DNA from: Obrimoposthia wandeli
Taxonomy: Eukaryota
Direction: 5' to 3'
DNA: 64,000 nt
Assembly: GCA_977020255.1 (NCBI GenBank)
Contig: CDROCS010000506.1
Coordinates: 1,612,001-1,676,000 of the forward strand
Shown here: piece after piece, positions 36,708 to 46,631 of the stretch
How positions within the stretch are numbered: the stretch's first letter is position 1
Layout: every line of letters begins with the position of its first letter
Notes under the pieces: generated by a model
Seen by the model: only the letters and a program-made list of their open reading frames with translations
Database searches by the model: none
Told to the model about the DNA's origin: nothing
Translations under genes and position numbers: made by a program

Positions 36708-39644
36708 TTAATAATCATCATCATATGCAGGACCAGTAAAGTTATCAAAGCGAGAGAATTCACCGTTAAAAGTTAATCTTACTTTACCAATTGGGCCGTT
36801 ACGTTGTTTACCGATAATGATTTCGGCGGTGCCTTTATCTGGCGAATCATCGTTATAAACTTCATCACGATAAATAAACATAATTAAATCGGCATCCTGC
36901 TCAATCGAACCTGATTCACGTAGATCCGAGTTAACTGGGCGCTTATCAGCACGTTGCTCCAACGAGCGGTTAAGCTGTGATAAGGCAATAACAGGACATT
37001 TAAGTTCCTTGGCAAGGGATTTCAATGAACGCGAAATTTCGGCAATTTCTAAGGTTCTGTTTTCACTTAACGCGGGCACTCGCATCAACTGTAGGTAGTC
37101 AATCATGATCATACTGATACCGCCGTGGTCACGGGCAATACGACGTGAACGCGAACGTACCTCGGTCGGAGTCAGACCAGAGCTATCATCAATATACATT
37201 TTACCCTGTTCCAGCATGCTCTTCATGGTTGCAGATAAACGCGCCCAATCATCATCATCCAACTGACCAGTACGTACTTTGGTTTGGTTAATCTTACCGA
37301 GTGACGCGAGCATACGCATCATGATCTGTTCTGCAGGCATCTCCAGCGAGAAAATAACCGCAGGTTTGTCTTCATTCAATGCCGCGTGCTCACACAAGTT
37401 CATCGCGAAAGTCGTATTATGAATACATATATCTTCAGCAATAAAGTTATGCGTATCAGGTACTGTTAAGTCATAAACCTGCTTATCACCTTGATGCTCA
37501 ATAGCGACAATTTCATCCCAATATAAATCAGATTGACTTAACTGCTGCAGATAATCATCATTTAATAATTCAGCAAACAAGGCTAAACGCTGACGAGAAA
37601 TACCTCTGGCACTCTCACCTTGAAGATGTGGGTTGTAGCCTTCTGGATACTCTTTACCTGCTGCATTGAATAACGTTCTCCACGACCGATCAGCTTTTTT
37701 CAGTAAAATATACTGATTCACAGATTCAGGCATCGTATCTTTATTAGTGTGCTGTGCTTTATCTGCTAATAATTTAGATACATCTGCAAGTGCCAGCTCT
37801 TTAGCAAAAATACCAATTTCACTAATGAATGTTAGGATACTTTGCTGATCTAATATTTCTAATTCATAAGGTGTAGCGCCATCATACTTACTTGTTTTTT
37901 CACGCACTTTGGCAATGATACCGAAACGCAGTAACAGATGTTGCAAGCCATGCACTAATGCGTAACTTGAAGAGGCATAACTTAATCGAGCTTGGTTATT
38001 AGCCTGTACAAAAGCACTACCATCACAGCTAAATAAGCGATTAATGAATAACGCTAATTGTGCTTTAGGCAAAATATAAACAGCATCAGGAATGGTTTTT
38101 TCTAATGCACTTTTATGCCATAACCCATGTGCAGCTAACCATTGAGTCACGCTGTTAATACTATTCTTCGCCATTGCCGTATAGCTCGGCACATCAGCAT
38201 CCGCTAACGTGAACTCAAGCTTTTCTAACAACACTGTTAATGTATCTTGTTCAGGAACACAATGACCATTACACCACTGACTGACACTGGCTTTACTCAC
38301 CGATAATATGCCAGCAAGGTCATTACCAGTGATATTTTTAGCTGCCATACTCTGCGTGAGTAAGGCTGAAAATTGACTTCTATACGCTTCAATTTGTGAC
38401 GTTTCAGCGCTGACTCTAAATGAAGGCGTTCTGTCTTCTGCTAGTACAGGTTTCACTGACACTGCATCAAATTGCTCAATGGCATTAATGAAATCCTGGC
38501 TAATAACCGGGTTCACATTGGTAAACATTGGATTCGATTGTGTCGTGCCACCGTCCGCAATGAAATATGCTAATGCTTTAACTTCATGCTCAGGCATCAC
38601 CTTATCACCAAAATAAGGTAACTCACGCGGTACAGCAATTTTTTCACCTACGCTAATATCTTCTAATGGTAACCAGCCATTACCAGTTAAAAACGGATGC
38701 GTCAAAGTCGTCGATATTTCTCGACCTAATGCAGTTTTAACTTTAAATACAGGTTTCATACCATCATCAACAAACGCAGATGCTTGAGTGACAGAAAGCG
38801 TATAATCGCTATTCACTGTAGCCAAGTTCGCTTGCTCATTAGCAACCAACTCATCAATACTATGCAGTTGACCTGTTAATGGGTCTAAAACTCGAGAGCC
38901 TGAAACAATACACTTACCCATCGATGGACGTGCAGCCACAATAATCAAATCAGACGGTTGGAATCCGGTTGTCATGCCATCAAGATCACCATAACCAGAA
39001 GCGACACCGGTCACACCGTCATGCGGGGTTTGGTAAAGCTCTTCGATTTTATCAACGGTTTCTTGCAGTACGCTTTCTAGATTTTTCGGGCCTTGGCCTT
39101 CGCTCTGTCTTGATTCTGCAATTTGGAATACTTTACTTTCAGCTAAATCGAGTAGGTCGGTACTTTTACGCCCTTGTGGCTCATAACCTGATTCACTGAT
39201 ATCGCTGGCAACCGCAATAAGTTCACGAATGACCGCACGCTCACGCACAATATTCGCATAAGCGGTAATATTCGACGCACTTGGGGTATTTTTAACAATA
39301 TCACCCAGATACGCAAAGCCGCCTGCATCATCAAGCAGCTCTTCGTTATCTAGCCATTCGGAAACGGTAATAATGTCCAGTGGGATATGTTGATCCACCA
39401 GCTTCGCCATTGCTTCGAAGATAAGTTGATGTGGGCGGCTGTAAAAATCTTTCGCCACAATAAATTCGGTTACACGATCCCAGGCTTCATTATCAATGAA
39501 TAAGCCACCTAAAACCGATTGCTCAGCCTCAAACGAGTGCGGCGGCACTTTTAGCGCATCAACAGCACTGTCTTTTCTATTTTTATCTTTTGAAAACTGA
39601 TTCTGAAACTGGTTTTGACGTTTGTCGGCCATGCTAGTGCTCAC
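36708..39644 (-). CDS. dnaB: Replicative DNA helicase DnaB precursor containing an intein (978 aa; about 479 aa after splicing)
   Basis: PPHSFEAEQSVLG, AARPSMGK/TTFAMN Walker A (interrupted), MIDYLQLM, DLRESGSIEQDAD, KQRNGP. Confidence 0.97.
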   Translation of the reverse strand: MSTSMADKRQNQFQNQFSKDKNRKDSAVDALKVPPHSFEAEQSVLGGLFIDNEAWDRVTEFIVAKDFYSRPHQLIFEAMAKLVDQHIPLDIITVSEWLDNEELLDDAGGFAYLGDIVKNTPSASNITAYANIVRERAVIRELIAVASDISESGYEPQGRKSTDLLDLAESKVFQIAESRQSEGQGPKNLESVLQETVDKIEELYQTPHDGVTGVASGYGDLDGMTTGFQPSDLIIVAARPSMGKCIVSGSRVLDPLTGQLHSIDELVANEQANLATVNSDYTLSVTQASAFVDDGMKPVFKVKTALGREISTTLTHPFLTGNGWLPLEDISVGEKIAVPRELPYFGDKVMPEHEVKALAYFIADGGTTQSNPMFTNVNPVISQDFINAIEQFDAVSVKPVLAEDRTPSFRVSAETSQIEAYRSQFSALLTQSMAAKNITGNDLAGILSVSKASVSQWCNGHCVPEQDTLTVLLEKLEFTLADADVPSYTAMAKNSINSVTQWLAAHGLWHKSALEKTIPDAVYILPKAQLALFINRLFSCDGSAFVQANNQARLSYASSSYALVHGLQHLLLRFGIIAKVREKTSKYDGATPYELEILDQQSILTFISEIGIFAKELALADVSKLLADKAQHTNKDTMPESVNQYILLKKADRSWRTLFNAAGKEYPEGYNPHLQGESARGISRQRLALFAELLNDDYLQQLSQSDLYWDEIVAIEHQGDKQVYDLTVPDTHNFIAEDICIHNTTFAMNLCEHAALNEDKPAVIFSLEMPAEQIMMRMLASLGKINQTKVRTGQLDDDDWARLSATMKSMLEQGKMYIDDSSGLTPTEVRSRSRRIARDHGGISMIMIDYLQLMRVPALSENRTLEIAEISRSLKSLAKELKCPVIALSQLNRSLEQRADKRPVNSDLRESGSIEQDADLIMFIYRDEVYNDDSPDKGTAEIIIGKQRNGPIGKVRLTFNGEFSRFDNFTGPAYDDDY
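37416..38912 (-). mobile_element. 499-aa intein with LAGLIDADG homing endonuclease in the DnaB P-loop
   Basis: Block A CIVSGSRV, block B TTLTHPFL, block C LAYFIADGG, block D KTIP, block E RLFSCDGS, block H LQHLLLRFGI, block F VYDLTVPDTHNF, block G ICIHN; the +1 residue is Thr. Excision restores SMGKTTFAMN. Confidence 0.95.
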
Positions 39645-40250: not shown

Positions 40251-41300
40251 TTAGCCTGATTTATGTGAACTAGATTCTCTATAAATACTCGGAGTTTTTC
40301 CTGTCCAGCCCTTAAAACTACGAAAGAATGAACGTGTTTCACTAAATCCTAACTGCATAGCAATATCATCGACTGTCATTTTAGTTTCAATTAGATATTG
40401 TTTCGCCAGCGATAGTCGCGCCTCATCTAATAACTTTTGATAGCTGGTTTGCTCTTGCTGTAATTTTCGCTGTAGTGTCCGTTCGCTCATATTTAACTGA
40501 CCAGCCACCATATCTTTGCGGGTTATCCCCTTGGCTAATAAGGTGCGGATAATATCTTTGACTTGAATACTAAAGCGATGCGAATCACCCAAAGCTGAAA
40601 CTTGTCCAGCAGCATGTAACTCTAAGGTTTGTAATAAACCATGGTCAGGTTGTCGTAAGGGGATATCCAAATAATCACGAGGTAAAATAAGGCTGTTATT
40701 TGGTTGAGAAAATAACACCGGGCAATTAAAAACCTGTTGGTAATGTTGAAGCAGTGCTTGCGAGGGTTTTGCCCGCTGTAAATGTACCGCTAACGGGCCA
40801 ACATCTTGTCCAGACAGCCAACGCGCATAAGCGAGCCAAGAGGCAAAAACATTATCCACCATCTGCTCGCGTACATCTTCAAACGTATAAGCACAATGCC
40901 AGTGAATGGCTAATTGTTGTGGCAGATAATCAATAGACGTAACGCCCATGTCCCCCACCAATTTTTCATAAGGTTGGATCCGCTCTAATGCTTGTGCAAG
41001 CGTCGCACACGTCATGGTGATATAACCTAATACGCTGTATGAACTCGGTTCAACAAACACGCCACTCTTTAAACCAAATAATGGATCGTCCGTGGCAATG
41101 ATAAGGTTGGCTAAAAAAGCCTGCAACTGCTCACCACTAATGCGTTCATTTTCTTGTGTCAACGTCGCAACAGATATGCGACTAGCCACTAATAGCGCCG
41201 GGATATCGATATCCAATGTCTCGACATAGCGCAAATACTGCTTAACTACTGGCACTGATGCCGAACCTAAGCCCACCATAACTGAATCATCCTTATTCAA
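40251..41300 (-). CDS. AraC-family regulator (OruR/VqsM-type N-terminal domain)
   Basis: YSVLGYITMTCATL, FNCPVLFSQP, LNMSERTLQRKLQ, LGFSETRSFFRSFKGWTGKTP; divergent from the 3-gene operon. Confidence 0.92.
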   Translation of the reverse strand: MNKDDSVMVGLGSASVPVVKQYLRYVETLDIDIPALLVASRISVATLTQENERISGEQLQAFLANLIIATDDPLFGLKSGVFVEPSSYSVLGYITMTCATLAQALERIQPYEKLVGDMGVTSIDYLPQQLAIHWHCAYTFEDVREQMVDNVFASWLAYARWLSGQDVGPLAVHLQRAKPSQALLQHYQQVFNCPVLFSQPNNSLILPRDYLDIPLRQPDHGLLQTLELHAAGQVSALGDSHRFSIQVKDIIRTLLAKGITRKDMVAGQLNMSERTLQRKLQQEQTSYQKLLDEARLSLAKQYLIETKMTVDDIAMQLGFSETRSFFRSFKGWTGKTPSIYRESSSHKSG

Positions 41301-41452
41301 TACGTATTATTGAGTATAGCTAGCTTTACCCTAAGGTATTGTGAGTTAGTCCTAATTTGATACTTATGTTGGCTTAATACGACAATGCTATCAACTGACC
41401 TTTGCGCTTAAACTTATGCTACACACCATAATATAACAAGGAAGATAAGCGC

Positions 41453-43138
41453 ATGAAACGTTGGAATGGTTGGGGCGATGAAGCCAATAAATTAGATTTA
41501 CCCAGTACAGCTGATGCTTTTTTACTGGCAAAAGTAGGCACGACAACACCACTCGTCGACGCACAACTTAGCGATGTCATTAAGCAAGTGCCTGAATCAA
41601 GGTTACCGAATCACCGCTTAATTAATCGTGATCCTGAAATTCGTATTCGCCATGCTCGAGGCCAAAGCCTGCCTGACTGGTTAGCCATGCGCAGTGGTGA
41701 TTTTGAATATTTTCCCGATGGCGTTTCATTTCCAGAAAATAATGACGACTTAATCGAACTCCTGAGTTTCTGTCAACAGCAACATATTCTGGTGATCCCT
41801 TATGGCGGCGGTACCAGTGTCGCTGGCCACATTAATCCATTCGCCTCACAGCAAGCCATATTAACCGTGGATATGGGCCGTATGAACCGCCTCATCGCAT
41901 TGGATACTGATAGCCAGCTCGCGACATTTGGTGCAGGAACCCCGGGGCCACAAGTCGAATCCCAATTGCGTGCTCAGGGATATACGCTGGGTCATTTTCC
42001 ACAATCTTTCGAGCTTTCAACCATTGGCGGCTGGGTAGTCACGCGGTCGAGCGGTCAACAGTCTTTACGTTATGGCCGTATCGAAGAATTGTTTGCCGGC
42101 GGTGAAGTCATTACCCCTGTCGGTCTATTGGATATCCCCACTTTTCCCGCATCCGCAGCAGGCCCTGACATTAAGGCCTTATTAATGGGTTCAGAAGGTC
42201 GTATTGGCATTTTATCGACTGTAAAAGTACGCGTACGTAAACTGGCTGAGCAAGAAAATTTTTACGTGACCTTCTTCCCAAGTTGGCAACAAGCTAAAGA
42301 GGCAGCGAAAACCTTAGTCCAATCCGATATTCAATTGTCGATGTTACGCCTCAGCAATGCCATCGAAACAGAAACACAACTCGCCTTAGCGGGACATGGA
42401 AAACAAATCGCCTTACTGGAAAAAGCCCTCGCTTTATTTGGCACCAAAGAAGGCAAGTGCATGATGACCTTTGGCTTAACGGGTACCGCATTCCAATGCC
42501 GCAGTGCGTTAAAGCAATTGAAAAAAATCACCAAAGCACATCAAGGTTTATATACCGGTTCATTCATGGGTAATAAATGGGCTGAGAAACGCTTTACCAT
42601 GCCCTACTTCCGTGAAGCTTTGTGGCAAAAAGGCTATGTGGTCGATACGCTCGAAACAGCAACCGATTGGCATAACGTAGATAACTTATTAACGAAAATA
42701 GAAACTAATCTCCGTACTGTGTTAGCGCAAAATTTAAATGCCGAAGAGGCCCCACAGCTACATGTATTTACTCACTTATCCCACTTTTACCAGCAAGGAT
42801 CGAGTATCTACACCACCTATATATTCAAAGCAGGTAAGAGCTATAAGCAAACCTTAGCGCAATGGGCAAAACTAAAACACTCAACCTCAGAGATCATCGT
42901 CAATAACCAAGGCACGATTAGTCATCAGCACGGTGTCGGTAAAGATCATCAACCCTATTTAGTCACAGAAAAGGGCGCGTTGACGATCCAAGCGATTCAA
43001 TCTCTGTGTGATACTTTTGATCCTCAACAGATCATGAACCCGCATTGCCTGATTGCTTCACCTAACGTCTCAACAACAGAATCAGAACCCGAGTTAGAGT
43101 TAGAATTAAAACCAAAACAAGCACAAGTCATCAGCTAG
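41453..43138 (+). CDS. FAD-binding oxidoreductase, alkyl-DHAP synthase (AGPS)-like
   Basis: MKRWNGWG, VIPYGGGTSV, GHFPQSFELSTIGGWVVTRSSG, GSEGRIG, ISHQHGVG. Confidence 0.85.
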   Translation: MKRWNGWGDEANKLDLPSTADAFLLAKVGTTTPLVDAQLSDVIKQVPESRLPNHRLINRDPEIRIRHARGQSLPDWLAMRSGDFEYFPDGVSFPENNDDLIELLSFCQQQHILVIPYGGGTSVAGHINPFASQQAILTVDMGRMNRLIALDTDSQLATFGAGTPGPQVESQLRAQGYTLGHFPQSFELSTIGGWVVTRSSGQQSLRYGRIEELFAGGEVITPVGLLDIPTFPASAAGPDIKALLMGSEGRIGILSTVKVRVRKLAEQENFYVTFFPSWQQAKEAAKTLVQSDIQLSMLRLSNAIETETQLALAGHGKQIALLEKALALFGTKEGKCMMTFGLTGTAFQCRSALKQLKKITKAHQGLYTGSFMGNKWAEKRFTMPYFREALWQKGYVVDTLETATDWHNVDNLLTKIETNLRTVLAQNLNAEEAPQLHVFTHLSHFYQQGSSIYTTYIFKAGKSYKQTLAQWAKLKHSTSEIIVNNQGTISHQHGVGKDHQPYLVTEKGALTIQAIQSLCDTFDPQQIMNPHCLIASPNVSTTESEPELELELKPKQAQVIS

Positions 43139-43148
43139 AGGGGGTTGT

Positions 43149-44864
43149 ATGTATCAGCCATTAACAAGTTTAACTCGAGATCAACAGCTCGAAAAACTGC
43201 AACTAAATAATGATAATACAATCTGGGATATGATCGTCGTTGGCGGTGGTATTACCGGTGCGGGTATCTTATTAACCGCGAGCCAAGCAGGACTCAAGGT
43301 ATTACTAATCGAGAAACAAGATTTTGCTTGGGGCGCATCCAGTAAATCATCAAAAATGGTGCACGGTGGTTTACGATATCTCGGCAGTGGTCAATATACT
43401 ATGACCAAAGACGCTGTAACTGAGCGGGAAAAACTGCTTAACGAGTTACCGGGTTTAGTTAACCCGCTGCAATTTCTGATGGGGCATTATAAATCTCAAT
43501 TCCCAGGGCCTTTTGTATTTAATAGCCTACTGACCATTTACGATTGGATTGGTGGCAAGCGTAATCACAGTTACATTAATCATGGTATTGCCGACTTTCA
43601 TGTCCCAGGGATTGAGCAACATAAATTACGCGGTGCGACCCAGTTTGCAGATGCAGTGACTGATGATGCAAGGCTTGTCATGCGGGTATTACAAGAAGCT
43701 CAAGAACTTGGTGGCACTGTGATGAATTACCTGAGTGCCGATATTCTTCTTAAACAAGAACTTGAAATAGAACCAAAAGCCGGCGATCAAGTCACAGGTA
43801 TTCGCGTCACAGACCAAGTATCAGGACAAGAATTTAACTTAACCGCAAAAGTAGTCATCAATGCGACAGGACCTTGGACCGATAAATTGCGCCAACAACT
43901 GCAAGCCAAAAAAGCCATTCGACCTTTGCGTGGCAGTCACTTGATCGTGCCCAGTTGGCGATTACCATTAGCCTACTCTGTCAGTTACTTCCACCCTGAA
44001 GATAAGCGTCCTATCTTTGCATTCCCTTGGGAAAATAGCACTGTCATTGGCACCACGGATCTTGACCATCAGCACGATCTAGAGCAACAGCCTTGTATTA
44101 GTCAAAACGAAGTTGATTATCTCCTTAGCGGGATCAACAAACAATTCCCACAAGCCGATATCAGTGAAGCCGACGTGATATCCACTTATGCCGGGATCCG
44201 TCCTGTTGTTAGTAATAGTGTCAGTAACAGTGCCAATAGCAAAAATGATGTCAACAACACCAAACCATCAGACGAAAAGCGTGAACATTCGATCTGGAAT
44301 GAACAAGGTTTAATAAGCGTGGCAGGCGGTAAACTAACAACCTTCAGGCTGATCGCCCTTGATGTATTAAAAGTGGCCCAACATTACTTACCCGATATGA
44401 ACTTAGTAGATCTACAAACGGCTAAATTGTTTAAAGCTATTACCGTAACGCCGCCCGTGGACAGCTACTTAAATCAACAGCAAATACAGCGGTTAAAAAG
44501 CCAGTACGGTAACCATTATAGCCACCTGCTTAATCATGCTCGTCACAATGAGCTAAAATCAATTGGTAGTACCAATACCTCAATCGCTGAATTGAGGTGG
44601 ATTTTACAGCACGAAATGGTAGTACACCTCGATGATCTATTATTACGTCGAAGTCGCATCGGCTTATTATTGCCTAAAGGGGGCGAGCAGTTGTTTGCGC
44701 AGTTACAGCCACTTTGCCAAACCGCATTGCACTGGGATGATAAGCACTGGCAACACGAAGTCACGCGCTATCAAGATATGATTCAACGTTATTACGGCTT
44801 ACCGCAACAAAGAGCTGGTTTAGCCGCGTTTAACGATGATTCACCCCGTGTAGTTGCACACTAA
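43149..44864 (+). CDS. Glycerol-3-phosphate dehydrogenase/oxidase family FAD enzyme
   Basis: VVGGGITGAG, DFAWGASSKSSKMVHGGLRYL, DDARL, GGKLTTFR, LDDLLLRRSR. Confidence 0.88.
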   Translation: MYQPLTSLTRDQQLEKLQLNNDNTIWDMIVVGGGITGAGILLTASQAGLKVLLIEKQDFAWGASSKSSKMVHGGLRYLGSGQYTMTKDAVTEREKLLNELPGLVNPLQFLMGHYKSQFPGPFVFNSLLTIYDWIGGKRNHSYINHGIADFHVPGIEQHKLRGATQFADAVTDDARLVMRVLQEAQELGGTVMNYLSADILLKQELEIEPKAGDQVTGIRVTDQVSGQEFNLTAKVVINATGPWTDKLRQQLQAKKAIRPLRGSHLIVPSWRLPLAYSVSYFHPEDKRPIFAFPWENSTVIGTTDLDHQHDLEQQPCISQNEVDYLLSGINKQFPQADISEADVISTYAGIRPVVSNSVSNSANSKNDVNNTKPSDEKREHSIWNEQGLISVAGGKLTTFRLIALDVLKVAQHYLPDMNLVDLQTAKLFKAITVTPPVDSYLNQQQIQRLKSQYGNHYSHLLNHARHNELKSIGSTNTSIAELRWILQHEMVVHLDDLLLRRSRIGLLLPKGGEQLFAQLQPLCQTALHWDDKHWQHEVTRYQDMIQRYYGLPQQRAGLAAFNDDSPRVVAH

Positions 44865-44884
44865 TTCAGTCGGAGATTATTTAC

Positions 44885-46537
44885 ATGGATAGTCGAGCTC
44901 CAACATCAGCGTCAATGAAATCAACGTCGGAACACAGTGCATCAAGCTCACGAGCATCCGAGCAGCAACAGCAGCAACAAGGTTATTTGCTCAGCATTGA
45001 TAATGGCACCCAGAGTGTGCGCGCACTGCTGTTTGATACTCAAGGTAATTTGCTCGCCAAAGGGCAACAAGTGATCACCCCCTACTTTTCTGCACAACCC
45101 GGTTGGGCTGAACAGGATCCTGATTATTATTGGCTCGCAGTGAAACAAGCCTGTGATTTACTTTGGCAAGATCTATCTCAATACCCTGCGATCAATAAAC
45201 GCGATATTGTCGGTATGTCGATCACCACACAGCGCGGAACGGTGATCAACCTCGACAGTGAAGGTAAAGTATTACGCCCTGCGATCATCTGGTTAGATCA
45301 ACGCCACGCCCAGCAAGAAAATATTCAATGGCCGTGGAACTGGTTGTTTAAGATTGCCCGTGTAGAAGATATTATTCAACGCTTCCAAGAAAAGTCCCAA
45401 GCTATTTGGATCCGTCAAAACCAGCCTGACATCTGGCGTGACACATCCAAATACCTGCTGCTGTCTGGTTTTTTAAATTATAAATTCACCGACAATATTG
45501 TCGATTCCATCGGTAGCCAAGTTGGTTACATTCCGTTTGATTATAAGAAACTAGCGTGGTTGAAAAAATCAGATTGGCGTTGGGATATGCTCGCTATCGA
45601 TCCAAACATGTTACCTAAGCTGATCGAACCCGGTGAACTTGTCGGCCATGTGTCAGAGGAAGCCGCGATCCATACCGGTATTCCAGCAGGTTTACCCGTT
45701 ATCGCTTCGGCATCAGATAAAGCCTGTGAAATTATCGGCTCTGGTGGTAATCGCCCGCATATTGCCTGCTTAAGTTATGGCACCACGGCAACCATCAATA
45801 TAACCACAGATAAATATGTCGAAGCTACGCCACACCTGCCGCCCTTTCCTTCGGCAATACCACGTCACTATTCATCCGAGATCATGATTTATCGTGGCTT
45901 TTGGTTAATCAGTTGGTTTAAAAAAGAGTTTGGTTTACGTGAACAACATATTGCTGATGCCGAGGGGATCGCACCTGAAGTGTTATTCGATCGTTTAGTC
46001 GCTAAGATCCCCGCAGGTTCTATGGGCTTGATGTTACAACCTTATTGGACACCGGGGGCACGCGATCCTGGTCCTGAAGCCAAAGGCGGTATTATTGGTT
46101 TTGGTGATGTGCATACGCGCACCCACATCTATCGGGCGATATTAGAAGGCTTAGCCTACGCATTACGGGAAGGCAAAGAACGTATCAGCAAGCGTAATAA
46201 GGTCAAGATAACGACATTAAGAGTATCTGGAGGTGGTTCGCAAAGTGATGTGGCGATGCAGCTAACAGCTAATATTTTTAATATGCCAGCAGAGCGCCCG
46301 CATACCTTTGAAACATCGGGGTTAGGTGCGGCGATTGTCACTGCGGTTGGGCTAGGAATTTATAGCAGTTTTGATCAAGCAATTGCAGCGATGACAAGGG
46401 TAAACACTGTGTTTCAGCCACAACCTGAAATCGTCAAAACGTATGATGCGCTATATAACCAAGTGTATTTGAAAATGTATAAACAACTACAGCCGTTATA
46501 TAAATCGATTCGTACCATCACTGGCTACCCAAAATAG
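44885..46537 (+). CDS. FGGY-family carbohydrate kinase
   Basis: LSIDNGTQSVR, GWAEQDP, IIWLDQR, RAILEGLAY, VSGGGSQS. Confidence 0.9.
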   Translation: MDSRAPTSASMKSTSEHSASSSRASEQQQQQQGYLLSIDNGTQSVRALLFDTQGNLLAKGQQVITPYFSAQPGWAEQDPDYYWLAVKQACDLLWQDLSQYPAINKRDIVGMSITTQRGTVINLDSEGKVLRPAIIWLDQRHAQQENIQWPWNWLFKIARVEDIIQRFQEKSQAIWIRQNQPDIWRDTSKYLLLSGFLNYKFTDNIVDSIGSQVGYIPFDYKKLAWLKKSDWRWDMLAIDPNMLPKLIEPGELVGHVSEEAAIHTGIPAGLPVIASASDKACEIIGSGGNRPHIACLSYGTTATINITTDKYVEATPHLPPFPSAIPRHYSSEIMIYRGFWLISWFKKEFGLREQHIADAEGIAPEVLFDRLVAKIPAGSMGLMLQPYWTPGARDPGPEAKGGIIGFGDVHTRTHIYRAILEGLAYALREGKERISKRNKVKITTLRVSGGGSQSDVAMQLTANIFNMPAERPHTFETSGLGAAIVTAVGLGIYSSFDQAIAAMTRVNTVFQPQPEIVKTYDALYNQVYLKMYKQLQPLYKSIRTITGYPK

Positions 46538-46573
46538 TAGCGGTGAGTAAAATACTAAATCGCAGGCATAAAA

Positions 46574-46599
46574 AAAGCCATGACCGAGGCCATGGCTTT
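46574..46599. terminator. Bidirectional terminator between kinase and rplI
   Basis: AAAGCCATG-N8-CATGGCTTT with an A-run on plus. Confidence 0.7.
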
Positions 46600-46631
46600 A
46601 TACTGTAGTTAATCTAAAGTTAAACTTTAAA

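What the first reader, a model, noticed from the sequence alone, without database searches (positions are those of the whole stretch)
40251..46537. AraC + AGPS-like + GlpD-like + FGGY kinase operon: possible alkylglycerol ether-lipid catabolism
Seen: three tightly spaced genes (10 and 20 bp gaps) divergent from an OruR/VqsM-type AraC gene. The first enzyme retains AGPS-like features (MKRWNGWG, SIYTTY, SHQHGVG). Established: eukaryotic alkyl-DHAP synthase exchanges acyl for alkyl on DHAP through FAD; a similar operon in Pseudomonas aeruginosa (PA3024-PA3026 with AraC PA3027, from memory) has been tied loosely to glycerolipid metabolism. Inference: the kinase phosphorylates an alkylglycerol, the GlpD-like enzyme oxidises it to alkyl-DHAP, and the AGPS-like enzyme releases the fatty alcohol. 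That would be an O2-independent ether cleavage route suited to marine animal lipids such as chimyl, batyl and selachyl alcohol.
Basis: partly seen in the sequence, partly recalled or inferred. Interest (0 to 1): 0.7.

Follow-up and report, generated by a model that had tools for sequence, protein, structure and literature searches.

The report
GliR-type AGPS-like glycerolipid operon
A Moritella bacterium carries the already described but biochemically unsolved "GliR" gene cluster, whose three enzymes look built to phosphorylate, oxidise and then strip the side chain off a glycerol that bears a greasy group on one end, so it is a concrete but untested candidate for an oxygen-independent way of breaking ether lipids.

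Summary
An AraC regulator (40251-41300, minus strand) faces three tightly packed plus-strand genes: an AGPS-like flavoenzyme, a GlpD-like dehydrogenase and an FGGY kinase. This is the Moritella ortholog of the P. aeruginosa GliR (PA3027) / PA3026-PA3024 cluster. That cluster's regulation is published (PMC8151288), but its biochemistry and inducer are unknown.

- The AGPS-like protein keeps the AGPS-specific N-terminal domain and all mutagenesis-defined catalytic residues. Only the middle His of the HHH loop is changed, to Gln.
- The GlpD-like protein keeps the motifs I recall as glycerol-3-phosphate-binding.
- The kinase has lost two glycerol-contacting side chains of GlpK (Glu84 to Gly, Tyr135 to Phe), and the segment holding Phe270 is deleted.
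- The trio is invariant in 80 loci, with no conserved transporter, reductase or acyltransferase.
- AGPS-GlpD fusion proteins exist.
- The same contig carries canonical glpK and glpD.

These points fit a module that turns a 1-substituted glycerol into a 1-substituted DHAP and then removes the substituent. Ether-lipid synthesis from lysolipids and catabolism of a soluble substrate remain open. The cluster itself is not new; the mechanism would be.

The parts
40251..41300 (-). AraC-family regulator, GliR (PA3027)-like, transcribed divergently from the operon
   Evidence: PF12625 Arabinose_bd (7e-41) and PF12833 HTH_18. The best NCBIfam model is NF050186 GliR, aligned end to end (residues 8-343 against model 1-336 of 338) at 413.9 bits, below the 570-bit equivalog cut-off. 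A homolog lies divergent from the trio in about 45 of 80 loci.
41301..41452 (.). Divergent promoter/operator region
   Evidence: 152 bp. A sigma-70-like pair TTGATA-18-GACAAT lies at 41357-41386. The box GACA[AG]TG[AC] sits about 72 nt before the AGPS start (window 41381-41388) and recurs in 29/41 araC-linked loci against 10/38 araC-less loci. I did not search this AT-rich spacer for the published GC-rich GliR motifs A and B. Contigs of a marine RNA library that cover the araC side end at 41308 or 41406, before the AGPS start.
41453..43138 (+). AGPS-like FAD enzyme (PA3026 ortholog), HQH-loop clade
   Evidence: phmmer against PDB: Dictyostelium ADPS 2UUU 3.3e-74, guinea-pig AGPS 4BBY 1.8e-54. 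AF2 model pLDDT 93.4. VIA-align Z 44, rmsd 1.7 A over 513 residues, model 1-534 on AGPS 87-658; D-lactate dehydrogenases align only from residue 49. Dictyostelium R352/R447/Y508 correspond to R299/R387/Y453. R387 and Y453 are invariant and R299 at least 90% conserved across 99 sequences. The HHH loop reads H491-Q492-H493.
43149..44864 (+). GlpD-like FAD dehydrogenase (PA3025 ortholog), paralog of canonical GlpD
   Evidence: DAO + DAO_C. NF008899 scores 296 bits, below the 360 cut-off. PDB GlpO 2RGH 2.6e-62, E. coli GlpD 2QCU 9e-54. The motifs HGGLRYL, GSH, GTTD, G(I/V)RP, (T/K)R and GGKLTT align with canonical GlpD. It forms a separate clade (support 98) with other AGPS-linked GlpD-likes.
44885..46537 (+). 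FGGY-family kinase (PA3024 ortholog) with a non-GlpK, non-XylB specificity signature
   Evidence: FGGY_N + FGGY_C. It is below every NCBIfam cut-off (XylB 258.9/380; GlpK 163/590). At the five FGGY specificity positions (PMC3245297) the family reads R (70/70), G (69/70), F (64/70), D (70/70) and a 2-residue deletion where GlpK has Phe270. The start MDSRAPTS is shared with M. dasanensis.
46574..46599 (.). Hairpin between the convergent kinase and rplI genes, a likely terminator
   Evidence: 11-bp stem with 5 G-C pairs. It was scored on the minus strand, where a T run follows. It lies 37 nt after the kinase stop. Its function for the plus-strand operon is inferred.

Best explanation
This is the Moritella copy of the GliR-controlled module known from P. 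aeruginosa (PA3027 / PA3026-PA3024). I read it as a substrate-inducible catabolic pathway for a glycerol that carries a non-hydrolysable, apolar substituent on C1. The most likely substrate is 1-O-alkylglycerol released from ether lipids.

Proposed steps (all inferred):
1. The FGGY kinase phosphorylates the free primary hydroxyl, giving 1-O-alkyl-sn-glycerol-3-phosphate.
2. The GlpD-like flavoprotein oxidises C2 and passes electrons to the quinone pool, giving 1-O-alkyl-DHAP.
3. The AGPS-like flavoenzyme runs the second half-reaction of alkyl-DHAP synthase backwards. It enolises at C1, forms the covalent FAD-N5 adduct and expels the fatty alcohol. Water then captures the iminium to release DHAP.

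The net result is DHAP plus fatty alcohol, with no O2 needed for the cleavage. The AraC regulator switches the operon on when a ligand, still unknown, is present.

Shown here: gene identities, the conserved operon, conserved catalytic residues, the altered kinase pocket, and the existence of fusion proteins. Shown elsewhere: GliR activates the orthologous operon, a phospholipase C and a lipid kinase. Inferred: the substrate, the order of steps and the direction of the AGPS-like reaction.
For: 1. AGPS chemistry is retained. The best PDB matches are AGPS only. Z is 44 over 513 residues starting at residue 1, so the AGPS-only N-terminal domain is present, with a helix at 18-27 where I expect the gate helix. 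The residues shown by mutagenesis to matter in Dictyostelium (R352, R447, Y508; PMC3509576) are kept.
2. The GlpD-like protein keeps the motifs that, by my recollection of E. coli GlpD, hold R54, H233, T270, R317, R332 and K354. It belongs to a clade that travels with AGPS-like genes.
3. The kinase keeps Arg83, Trp103 and Asp245 of GlpK. It replaces Glu84 by Gly and Tyr135 by Phe, and the segment holding Phe270 is deleted, throughout the family. In GlpK these residues contact glycerol (PMC3245297; PMC2680290). The pocket therefore still fits a glycerol end but is apolar and more open at the other end.
4. AGPS-GlpD fusion proteins of about 1100 aa exist. AGPS+GlpD pairs occur in contigs whose neighbours (NiFe hydrogenase, ferredoxins) suggest anaerobes.
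5. Across 80 loci nothing else is conserved with the trio: no transporter, no acyltransferase, no reductase. The three enzymes alone lead to a central metabolite. The lack of a transporter fits a membrane-soluble substrate.
6. Canonical glpK (735 bits) and glpD (785 bits) lie on the same contig, so this is not the cell's ordinary glycerol route.
7. In P. aeruginosa, GliR overproduction raises PA3024-26 by 135-173 fold, a phospholipase C (PA3464) by 130 fold and the lipid kinase PA3023 by 47 fold (PMC8151288). A YegS/DagK-type lipid kinase also follows the trio in 14 of the loci, all Pseudomonas-group.
8. Many carriers are oil- and lipid-degrading marine genera such as Marinobacter, Oleiphilus and Hahella.
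Against: - No biochemical or genetic test with ether lipids exists for any ortholog.
- The P. aeruginosa operon deletion had no phenotype on rich or minimal media or on Biolog plates, and the effector is unknown (PMC8151288).
- All characterised FGGY kinases act on soluble sugars or polyols. In Pseudomonas a lipid kinase sits next door and could be the true lipid-phosphorylating enzyme.
- The only known activity of AGPS is ether synthesis. An alkoxide is a poorer leaving group than a carboxylate.
- The middle His of the HHH loop is Gln in this clade, with unknown consequence.
- In a marine RNA library the operon pieces are at low contig depth (2-5) beside the araC side (about 51). This shows at most basal transcription.
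Confidence: 0.4

Rival explanations
1. Ether-lipid synthesis or remodelling. The GlpD-like enzyme oxidises 1-acyl-glycerol-3-phosphate (lysophosphatidate, made from monoacylglycerol by the kinase or by normal lipid synthesis) to acyl-DHAP. This replaces the eukaryotic DHAP acyltransferase. The AGPS-like enzyme then works in its classical direction and swaps the acyl group for a fatty alcohol to give alkyl-DHAP.
For: The only proven AGPS activity is synthesis, and the catalytic residues and N-terminal domain are intact. The literature treats bacterial agps homologs as biosynthetic, with Myxococcus Mxan_1676 as the example. Many carriers make or meet fatty alcohols, being wax-ester formers or alkane degraders (the physiology is from my own knowledge). 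Fusion with GlpD would channel acyl-DHAP. Kotecka et al. proposed a synthetic role.
Against: None of the 80 loci has an alkyl-DHAP reductase, a fatty acyl reductase or an acyltransferase next to the trio. A separate lineage does fuse an acyltransferase to AGPS (P0208). A quinone-linked GlpD-type oxidation runs opposite to the reductive step that synthesis needs. A silent operon activated by an AraC regulator and paired with a kinase is typical of catabolism. To my knowledge, ether lipids have not been reported from Pseudomonas, Marinobacter or Moritella.
Confidence: 0.25
2. Catabolism of a small, water-soluble compound. This would be a tetritol or pentitol (as with the Brucella erythritol kinase EryA plus the GlpD-like EryB) or a glycerol carrying a small C1 substituent (short ether, thioether, halide, sulfonate). 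The AGPS-like enzyme would use its C1-enolisation chemistry to eliminate or isomerise.
For: FGGY kinases are known only for soluble substrates, and the best NCBIfam score of the kinase is for xylulokinase. The FGGY + GlpD-like pairing has a polyol precedent (EryA is listed in PMC3245297; EryB is from my own knowledge). The sequence does not fix the size of the substituent.
Against: No transporter, isomerase or aldolase is conserved beside the trio in 80 loci. The kinase pocket changes are towards apolar residues, not towards extra hydrogen bonding. The AGPS-only N-terminal domain is kept. The P. aeruginosa regulon partners are a phospholipase C and a lipid kinase. The operon deletion gave no phenotype on Biolog carbon plates 1 and 2; which polyols those plates hold is my own knowledge.
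Confidence: 0.2
3. A redundant plain glycerol route: glycerol to G3P to DHAP, feeding an AGPS that needs a separate acyltransferase. This is how the P. aeruginosa paper drew it.
For: The homology-based annotation reads glycerol kinase-like and G3P dehydrogenase-like. It is the pathway drawn in PMC8151288.
Against: The same contig has canonical glpK and glpD above their equivalog cut-offs. [quoted passage not shown] It scores 163 bits against a 590-bit GlpK cut-off. DHAP is a central metabolite and needs no dedicated supply. The P. aeruginosa deletion grows normally on glycerol.
Confidence: 0.05

Closest known systems
P. aeruginosa GliR (PA3027) regulon: PA3026-PA3024 (+PA3023), Kotecka et al. 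2021, PMC8151288
   Same: The same four gene families in the same order and orientation: a divergent AraC with a PF12625 domain, then an AGPS-like, a GlpD-like and an FGGY gene. The regulator's best model is GliR, aligned end to end. Pseudomonas orthologs of the AGPS-like protein are about 60% identical.
   Different: Moritella has no YegS-type lipid kinase after the kinase gene. The regulator scores below the GliR equivalog cut-off (414 against 570 bits). The intergenic DNA is AT-rich, and I did not search it for the published GC-rich motifs A and B. In both organisms the substrate and inducer are unknown.
Eukaryotic alkyl-DHAP synthase (AGPS/ADPS, EC 2.5.1.26; PDB 2UUU, 4BBY)
   Same: The fold matches, including the AGPS-specific N-terminal domain (Z 44, rmsd 1.7 A). 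WNGWG motif, catalytic Tyr, both active-site Arg, and the first and third His of the HHH loop are kept.
   Different: Identity is only 24-28%. The region between WNGWG and the core is about 30-40 residues shorter (my count from the offsets). The middle His is Gln across most of the clade. There is no peroxisomal targeting context. The gene is operon-linked or fused to a G3P-dehydrogenase homolog and a kinase, not to an acyltransferase. Activity and direction are untested.
Canonical bacterial glycerol catabolism GlpK/GlpD
   Same: The same two protein families and, by inference, the same two chemical steps: phosphorylation of a primary hydroxyl and FAD-dependent oxidation at C2.
   Different: These are paralogs. 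The true glpK and glpD lie about 1.5 Mb away on the same contig. The kinase signature is R-G-F-D-deletion instead of R-E-Y-D-F. The dehydrogenase sits in a separate clade. Both fall below the NCBIfam cut-offs.
Alkylglycerol monooxygenase (AGMO) of animals
   Same: If the leading reading is right, both would have the same physiological job, cleaving the 1-O-alkyl bond of alkylglycerols.
   Different: AGMO is unrelated in sequence and mechanism. It is a membrane di-iron, tetrahydrobiopterin- and O2-dependent hydroxylase, described in reviews as the only known ether-cleaving enzyme (abstracts of PMC7911779 and PMC9192799). The route proposed here needs no O2 for the cleavage and acts on the phosphorylated keto form.
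Myxococcus xanthus Agps (Mxan_1676) and acyltransferase-AGPS fusions
   Same: They are bacterial members of the AGPS superfamily.
   Different: The acyltransferase-AGPS fusion P0208 has an HHH loop and pairs AGPS with an acyltransferase, which is the logic of synthesis. The myxobacterial gene itself was not examined here. The Moritella protein belongs to a separate, well supported clade (16 rows, support 100) that pairs with GlpD-like and FGGY genes.

Membership tests
AGPS / alkyl-DHAP synthase (EC 2.5.1.26) | VAO-type FAD-binding domain plus cap domain | tested here: met
   PF01565 4.6e-33 and PF02913 4.4e-35. The AF2 model (pLDDT 93.4) has AGPS structures as its top 37 Foldseek matches.
AGPS / alkyl-DHAP synthase (EC 2.5.1.26) | AGPS-only N-terminal domain with the WNGWG motif and gate-keeping helix | tested here: met
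   The model aligns from residue 1 onto AGPS residue 87, whereas D-lactate dehydrogenases align only from residue 49. WNGWG is at residues 4-8 and a helix at 18-27. The domain is shorter than in eukaryotes. Equating this helix with the gate helix is my inference.
AGPS / alkyl-DHAP synthase (EC 2.5.1.26) | Catalytic Tyr (Dd Y508 / Cavia Y578) and the two active-site Arg (Dd R352, R447) | tested here: met
   These correspond to Y453, R299 and R387 by the HMMER alignment. Y453 and R387 are invariant and R299 is at least 90% conserved in 99 sequences. The role of the residues is taken from PMC3509576.
AGPS / alkyl-DHAP synthase (EC 2.5.1.26) | His-His-His loop | tested here: not met
   The loop reads H491-Q492-H493. 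HQH holds in the query and most intact members of its 16-row clade, while nearly all other AGPS-like sequences have HHH.
AGPS / alkyl-DHAP synthase (EC 2.5.1.26) | Exchange of the acyl group of acyl-DHAP for a fatty alcohol; C16-sized hydrophobic tunnel | not testable with these tools
   This needs an enzyme assay. Model coordinates cannot be inspected here.
GliR (PA3027) regulon cluster | Divergent AraC regulator of the GliR type | tested here: inconclusive
   NF050186 is the best model and is aligned over its full length, but at 413.9 bits against a 570-bit cut-off.
GliR (PA3027) regulon cluster | Operon order AGPS-like, GlpD-like, FGGY kinase | tested here: met
   The order is identical in the window and in Pseudomonas loci such as L042, L050 and L072.
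GliR (PA3027) regulon cluster | GliR binding motifs A (YYGGCGHTDTYSGMC) and B (GGAYAWCGCCG) in the promoter | not tested
   I did not run a pattern search for motifs A or B on the AT-rich Moritella spacer. A different short box, GACA[AG]TG[AC], recurs about 72 nt upstream in araC-linked loci.
Aerobic glycerol-3-phosphate dehydrogenase GlpD (EC 1.1.5.3) | DAO + DAO_C architecture and the residues that bind and oxidise G3P | tested here: met
   Pfam. The motifs that I recall as holding R54, H233, T270, R317, R332 and K354 of E. coli GlpD are all kept.
Aerobic glycerol-3-phosphate dehydrogenase GlpD (EC 1.1.5.3) | Equivalog-level similarity to GlpD | tested here: not met
   NF008899 scores 296 bits against a 360 cut-off. 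The true GlpD of the same contig scores 785. The protein falls in a separate clade.
Glycerol kinase GlpK (EC 2.7.1.30) | Five-residue specificity signature R83-E84-Y135-D245-F270 | tested here: not met
   The family signature is R-G-F-D-deletion in 64-70 of 70 sequences. TIGR01311 scores 163 bits against 590.
Xylulokinase XylB | Equivalog score and the Met-His pair at the first two specificity positions | tested here: not met
   TIGR01312 scores 258.9 against 380.25. The first two positions are Arg-Gly, not Met-His (signature from PMC3245297).

The most novel reading that the evidence does not exclude
The AGPS-like/GlpD-like/FGGY trio is the first bacterial pathway for catabolising 1-O-alkylglycerol ether lipids. 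It would cleave the ether bond without oxygen, by running covalent-flavin AGPS chemistry in reverse on alkyl-DHAP with water as the acceptor. It is spread over at least 580 species genomes and, as AGPS-GlpD pairs and fusions, into contigs that look anaerobic. It would also be the first FGGY kinase with a lipid-like substrate and the first G3P dehydrogenase homolog specific for a 1-substituted G3P.
Probability: 0.3. Interest if true: 0.85.

Novelty: new member of a known kind. Interest (0 to 1): 0.6.

Why it matters
Alkyl glycerol ethers are abundant in marine animals, protists, anaerobic bacteria and sediments, and they resist lipases. The only enzyme known to cut the bond is the animal O2- and tetrahydrobiopterin-dependent AGMO. 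How bacteria recycle these lipids, especially without oxygen, is an open question.

This cluster gives three soluble, easily expressed candidate enzymes and a candidate sensor. It occurs in tractable hosts (P. aeruginosa, Marinobacter), so the question becomes directly testable. If the direction turns out to be synthetic instead, it would define a new bacterial route to ether lipids that bypasses DHAP acyltransferase. Either way it would assign a function to the GliR regulon of an important pathogen, and it would show a second physiological use of the unusual non-redox flavin chemistry of AGPS.

Tried and rejected
- The genome search 'relatives' failed, because the window's assembly (1.35 Gb, mixed) has no relatives in the collection. 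I used the search for related loci instead.
- The maximum-likelihood tree did not finish in time. I used FastTree.
- The AGPS structure paper of Nenci et al. (2012) is not held, and I did not look for Razeto et al. (2007). Residue roles come from a review and from my own memory, marked as such.
- I could not list tunnel-lining residues or inspect the model's cavity.
- Upstream regions share only a short box that overlaps a -10-like hexamer in the window. I make no operator claim.
- Contexts of HHH-type AGPS-like proteins outside the clade (P0135, P0153, P0171, P0248) were short contigs with nothing informative.
- Literature searches for bacterial growth on batyl or chimyl alcohol, for Rv2251/Rv2249c and for bacterial alkylglycerol catabolism found nothing relevant. 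My recollection of a mycobacterial glpD1 / AGPS-like / diacylglycerol-kinase cluster could not be checked and is not used as evidence.
- Metatranscriptome contigs show presence only, not induction.
- Rejected: plain glycerol catabolism (canonical genes are present and the kinase signature is wrong), and a chance juxtaposition.

Full report
**Observation.** The window holds an AraC-family gene at 40251-41300 on the minus strand. After a 152-bp spacer come three plus-strand genes at 41453-43138, 43149-44864 and 44885-46537, separated by 10 and 20 bp. Each has a Shine-Dalgarno-like run before its ATG. Pfam assigns Arabinose_bd + HTH_18; FAD_binding_4 + FAD-oxidase_C; DAO + DAO_C; and FGGY_N + FGGY_C. 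Promoter-like and terminator-like sites inside the three genes are no more frequent than in shuffled sequence. A strong hairpin lies at 46574-46599, between the kinase gene and the convergent rplI. The flanking genes are unrelated: an intein-bearing dnaB and a cytochrome c on one side, ribosomal proteins L9 and S6 on the other.

**Organism and setting.** The window lies on contig C506 of a 1.35-Gb, 6912-contig assembly that holds many bacteria. The same contig carries canonical glpK (735 bits, above cut-off) and glpD (785 bits) next to each other, about 1.5 Mb away. The operon is therefore a paralogous, specialised system, not the cell's glycerol route.

**It is a known cluster.** The regulator's best NCBIfam model is GliR, aligned end to end at 414 bits, which is under the 570-bit equivalog cut-off. 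GliR is PA3027 of P. aeruginosa. Kotecka et al. (PMC8151288) showed by RNA-seq, ChIP-seq, EMSA and reporter assays that it activates the divergent PA3026-PA3024 operon, which has the same three families in the same order. Overproduction raised PA3024-26 by 135-173 fold, the phospholipase C PA3464 by 130 fold, the YegS-type lipid kinase PA3023 by 47 fold and a DUF2804 protein by 15 fold. The effector is unknown. Deleting the regulator or the operon gave no phenotype on rich or minimal media, on glycerol or on Biolog plates. The authors proposed, from annotation only, a route from glycerol to alkyl-DHAP.

**Conservation.** A scan of one genome per species found at least 584 loci encoding a close relative of the first enzyme. 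The 80 best came from Moritella, Oleiphilus, Hahella, Marinobacter, Pseudomonas, Halomonadaceae, Thalassomonas, Rhodanobacter and others. I clustered all ORFs of these loci. The GlpD-like, kinase and AGPS-like genes were called in 73, 70 and 69 of 81 rows (window included). The order AGPS-GlpD-FGGY was called outright in 59 rows. The remaining rows are mostly truncated contigs or show opposite-strand ORF calls in high-GC DNA. The AraC gene is present in 45. The only other recurrent, functionally suggestive neighbour is a DAGK_cat/YegS_C lipid kinase in 14 Pseudomonas-group loci. Everything else (type II secretion, molybdenum cofactor genes, GGDEF/EAL proteins, toxin-antitoxin pairs) is lineage-specific synteny. 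No transporter, lipase, acyltransferase or reductase travels with the trio.

**The AGPS-like enzyme.** Sequence search of the PDB gives Dictyostelium ADPS at 3.3e-74 and guinea-pig AGPS at 1.8e-54, with D-lactate dehydrogenases far behind. An AlphaFold model built on 99 sequences has mean pLDDT 93.4. Its top 37 Foldseek matches are all AGPS. VIA-align gives Z 44 and rmsd 1.7 A over 513 residues, with model residues 1-534 on AGPS 87-658. Other VAO-family enzymes align only from about residue 49. The N-terminal domain that is peculiar to AGPS and gates its lipid channel (PMC3509576) is therefore present, including WNGWG and a helix at 18-27. It is shorter than in eukaryotes. Mutagenesis showed that R352, R447 and Y508 matter in Dictyostelium. 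They correspond to R299, R387 and Y453. R387 and Y453 are invariant across the 99-sequence alignment and R299 is at least 90% conserved. The HHH loop reads H-Q-H. In a tree of 120 representatives the query sits in a 16-row clade with support 100. That clade is mostly HQH with WNGWG, and it is set apart from the large HHH group. I conclude that the enzyme very probably performs AGPS-type chemistry at C1 of a DHAP derivative, not an ordinary dehydrogenation. Whether the Gln changes the acceptor or the leaving group is unknown.

**Links between the enzymes.** Representatives of the clade are again next to GlpD-like genes. P0123 is in a contig with hydrogenase and ferredoxin genes. P0132 has the full overlapping trio. 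P0133 is a sister lineage. P0130 is next to an FGGY gene, and P0124 next to the AraC gene. Four proteins of about 1100 aa are direct AGPS-GlpD fusions, all with HHH loops. A different protein fuses an acyltransferase to AGPS. Fusion argues that the two flavoenzymes handle consecutive intermediates. The unfused AGPS-linked GlpD-likes form their own clade (support 98), away from canonical GlpD and from GlpO-type enzymes.

**The GlpD-like enzyme.** It aligns with GlpO and GlpD structures at 1e-54 to 1e-62. It keeps the motifs that, in my recollection of E. coli GlpD, carry R54, H233, T270, R317, R332 and K354. It scores below the GlpD equivalog cut-offs. I infer that the substrate has a glycerol-3-phosphate head.

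**The kinase.** It is under every NCBIfam cut-off. The best model is xylulokinase and the best PDB match is an archaeal glycerol kinase. Zhang et al. defined five specificity positions for the FGGY family. In GlpK these are R83, E84, Y135, D245 and F270, which are extremely well conserved across GlpK clusters and all touch glycerol (PMC3245297; PMC2680290). I aligned 70 operon kinases with the canonical Moritella GlpK. The family reads R (70/70), G (69/70), F (64/70), D (70/70) and a two-residue deletion at the Phe270 position. Trp103 is kept. So the catalytic Asp and the Arg remain. Two of the four hydrogen-bonding side chains have become apolar or absent, and the lid residue is gone. This is what one would expect for a glycerol whose far hydroxyl is replaced by something apolar and larger. 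That reading is an inference, because I could not verify which hydroxyl each residue contacts.

**Mechanism.** Taken together, the three proteins look like a unit. It takes X-CH2-CHOH-CH2OH, phosphorylates the free primary hydroxyl, oxidises C2, and then lets an AGPS-type flavoenzyme act on C1 of X-CH2-CO-CH2-OP. If water captures the flavin-bound intermediate, the products are DHAP and XH. From memory, water capture is a known side reaction of AGPS when no fatty alcohol is present. Such a three-enzyme detour only makes sense if X cannot be removed by a hydrolase, which points to an ether.

Five things favour a membrane lipid, that is 1-O-alkylglycerol:
- no transporter is conserved with the trio;
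- the AGPS N-terminal domain is retained;
- the P. aeruginosa regulon includes a phospholipase C and a lipid kinase;
- many carriers are lipid- and oil-degrading marine genera;
- AGPS-GlpD pairs occur in contigs that look anaerobic.

I rate it the best single explanation at about 0.4.

**Rivals.** The same first two activities, acting on monoacylglycerol or lysophosphatidate, would give acyl-DHAP. A classical AGPS would then convert that, with a fatty alcohol, into alkyl-DHAP. This would be a synthesis route that bypasses DHAP acyltransferase (0.25). Against it: no reductase, fatty acyl reductase or acyltransferase is linked, the GlpD step is oxidative, and the operon has a catabolic style. 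A soluble polyol or a small 1-substituted glycerol is possible (0.2), since FGGY kinases are known only for soluble substrates and the EryA/EryB pair is a precedent. However, the missing transporter, the apolar pocket changes and the lipid-related regulon partners argue against it. Plain glycerol use is unlikely (0.05).

**Expression.** One marine metatranscriptome holds contigs 95-99% identical to pieces of all three genes at contig depth 2-5. A 4.5-kb contig over the araC side has depth 51 and stops at 41406, just before the first enzyme's start. Contigs cannot prove transcription or measure its level. At most, this fits a poorly expressed, inducible operon.

**Verdict.** The feature is real, and the gene cluster is already described as a regulon of unknown biochemistry, so the locus is a new member of a known kind. 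The sequence evidence gathered here makes that mechanism more specific and more plausible, but it does not prove it.

Noticed in passing
G000:C5743:30869-35706 (locus L112 covers part): A second AGPS-like / GlpD-like / FGGY trio sits in the same mixed assembly on a contig of another bacterium. Its AGPS-like protein is 54% identical to the window's.
   Followed up: partly
Proteins P0158, P0164, P0192, P0231 (loci L103, L104) and P0208: Natural fusion proteins exist: AGPS-like + GlpD-like (about 1100 aa, HHH loop) and, separately, acyltransferase + AGPS-like (801 aa). They are useful for sorting AGPS homologs into two functional contexts.
   Followed up: partly
Loci L018, L019, L021, L026, L027, L057, L064, L073, L076, L079, L089: GGDEF, EAL or response-regulator-GGDEF genes lie directly beside the trio or its araC in several unrelated genera (Oleiphilus, Hahella, Marinobacter, Halomonadaceae). 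This could be chance or a link to c-di-GMP signalling.
   Followed up: no
window 44885-44983: The Moritella kinase has a Ser/Gln-rich low-complexity N-terminal extension of about 25-30 residues before the conserved IDNGTQS motif. The start MDSRAPTS is shared with M. dasanensis, but the length differs. Other genera have only about 9-11 residues there.
   Followed up: partly
window 41347-41388: The box GACA[AG]TG[AC] lies about 72 nt before the AGPS-like start in 29 of 41 araC-linked loci, against 10 of 38 loci without araC. In the window it overlaps a -10-like hexamer. Oleiphilus, Thalassomonas and Cognaticolwellia instead show a TGTCC-N5-6-TGTCA-like element.
   Followed up: partly
window 40800-46600 in run X1: In a marine RNA library the contig over araC and the genes to its left has about ten times the depth of the pieces over the three enzyme genes, and it ends at 41406.
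   Followed up: partly
window 36708-39644: The replicative helicase DnaB is interrupted by an intein with a LAGLIDADG endonuclease and an HTH domain. Another follow-up of this scan has already reported it.
   Followed up: no
Protein P0129 (597 aa): An AGPS-like N-terminal two thirds is joined to a histone-deacetylase-family C-terminus. This is either a real fusion or an assembly or gene-calling chimera. A deacetylase-family gene also lies near the AGPS-GlpD fusion in L103.
   Followed up: no
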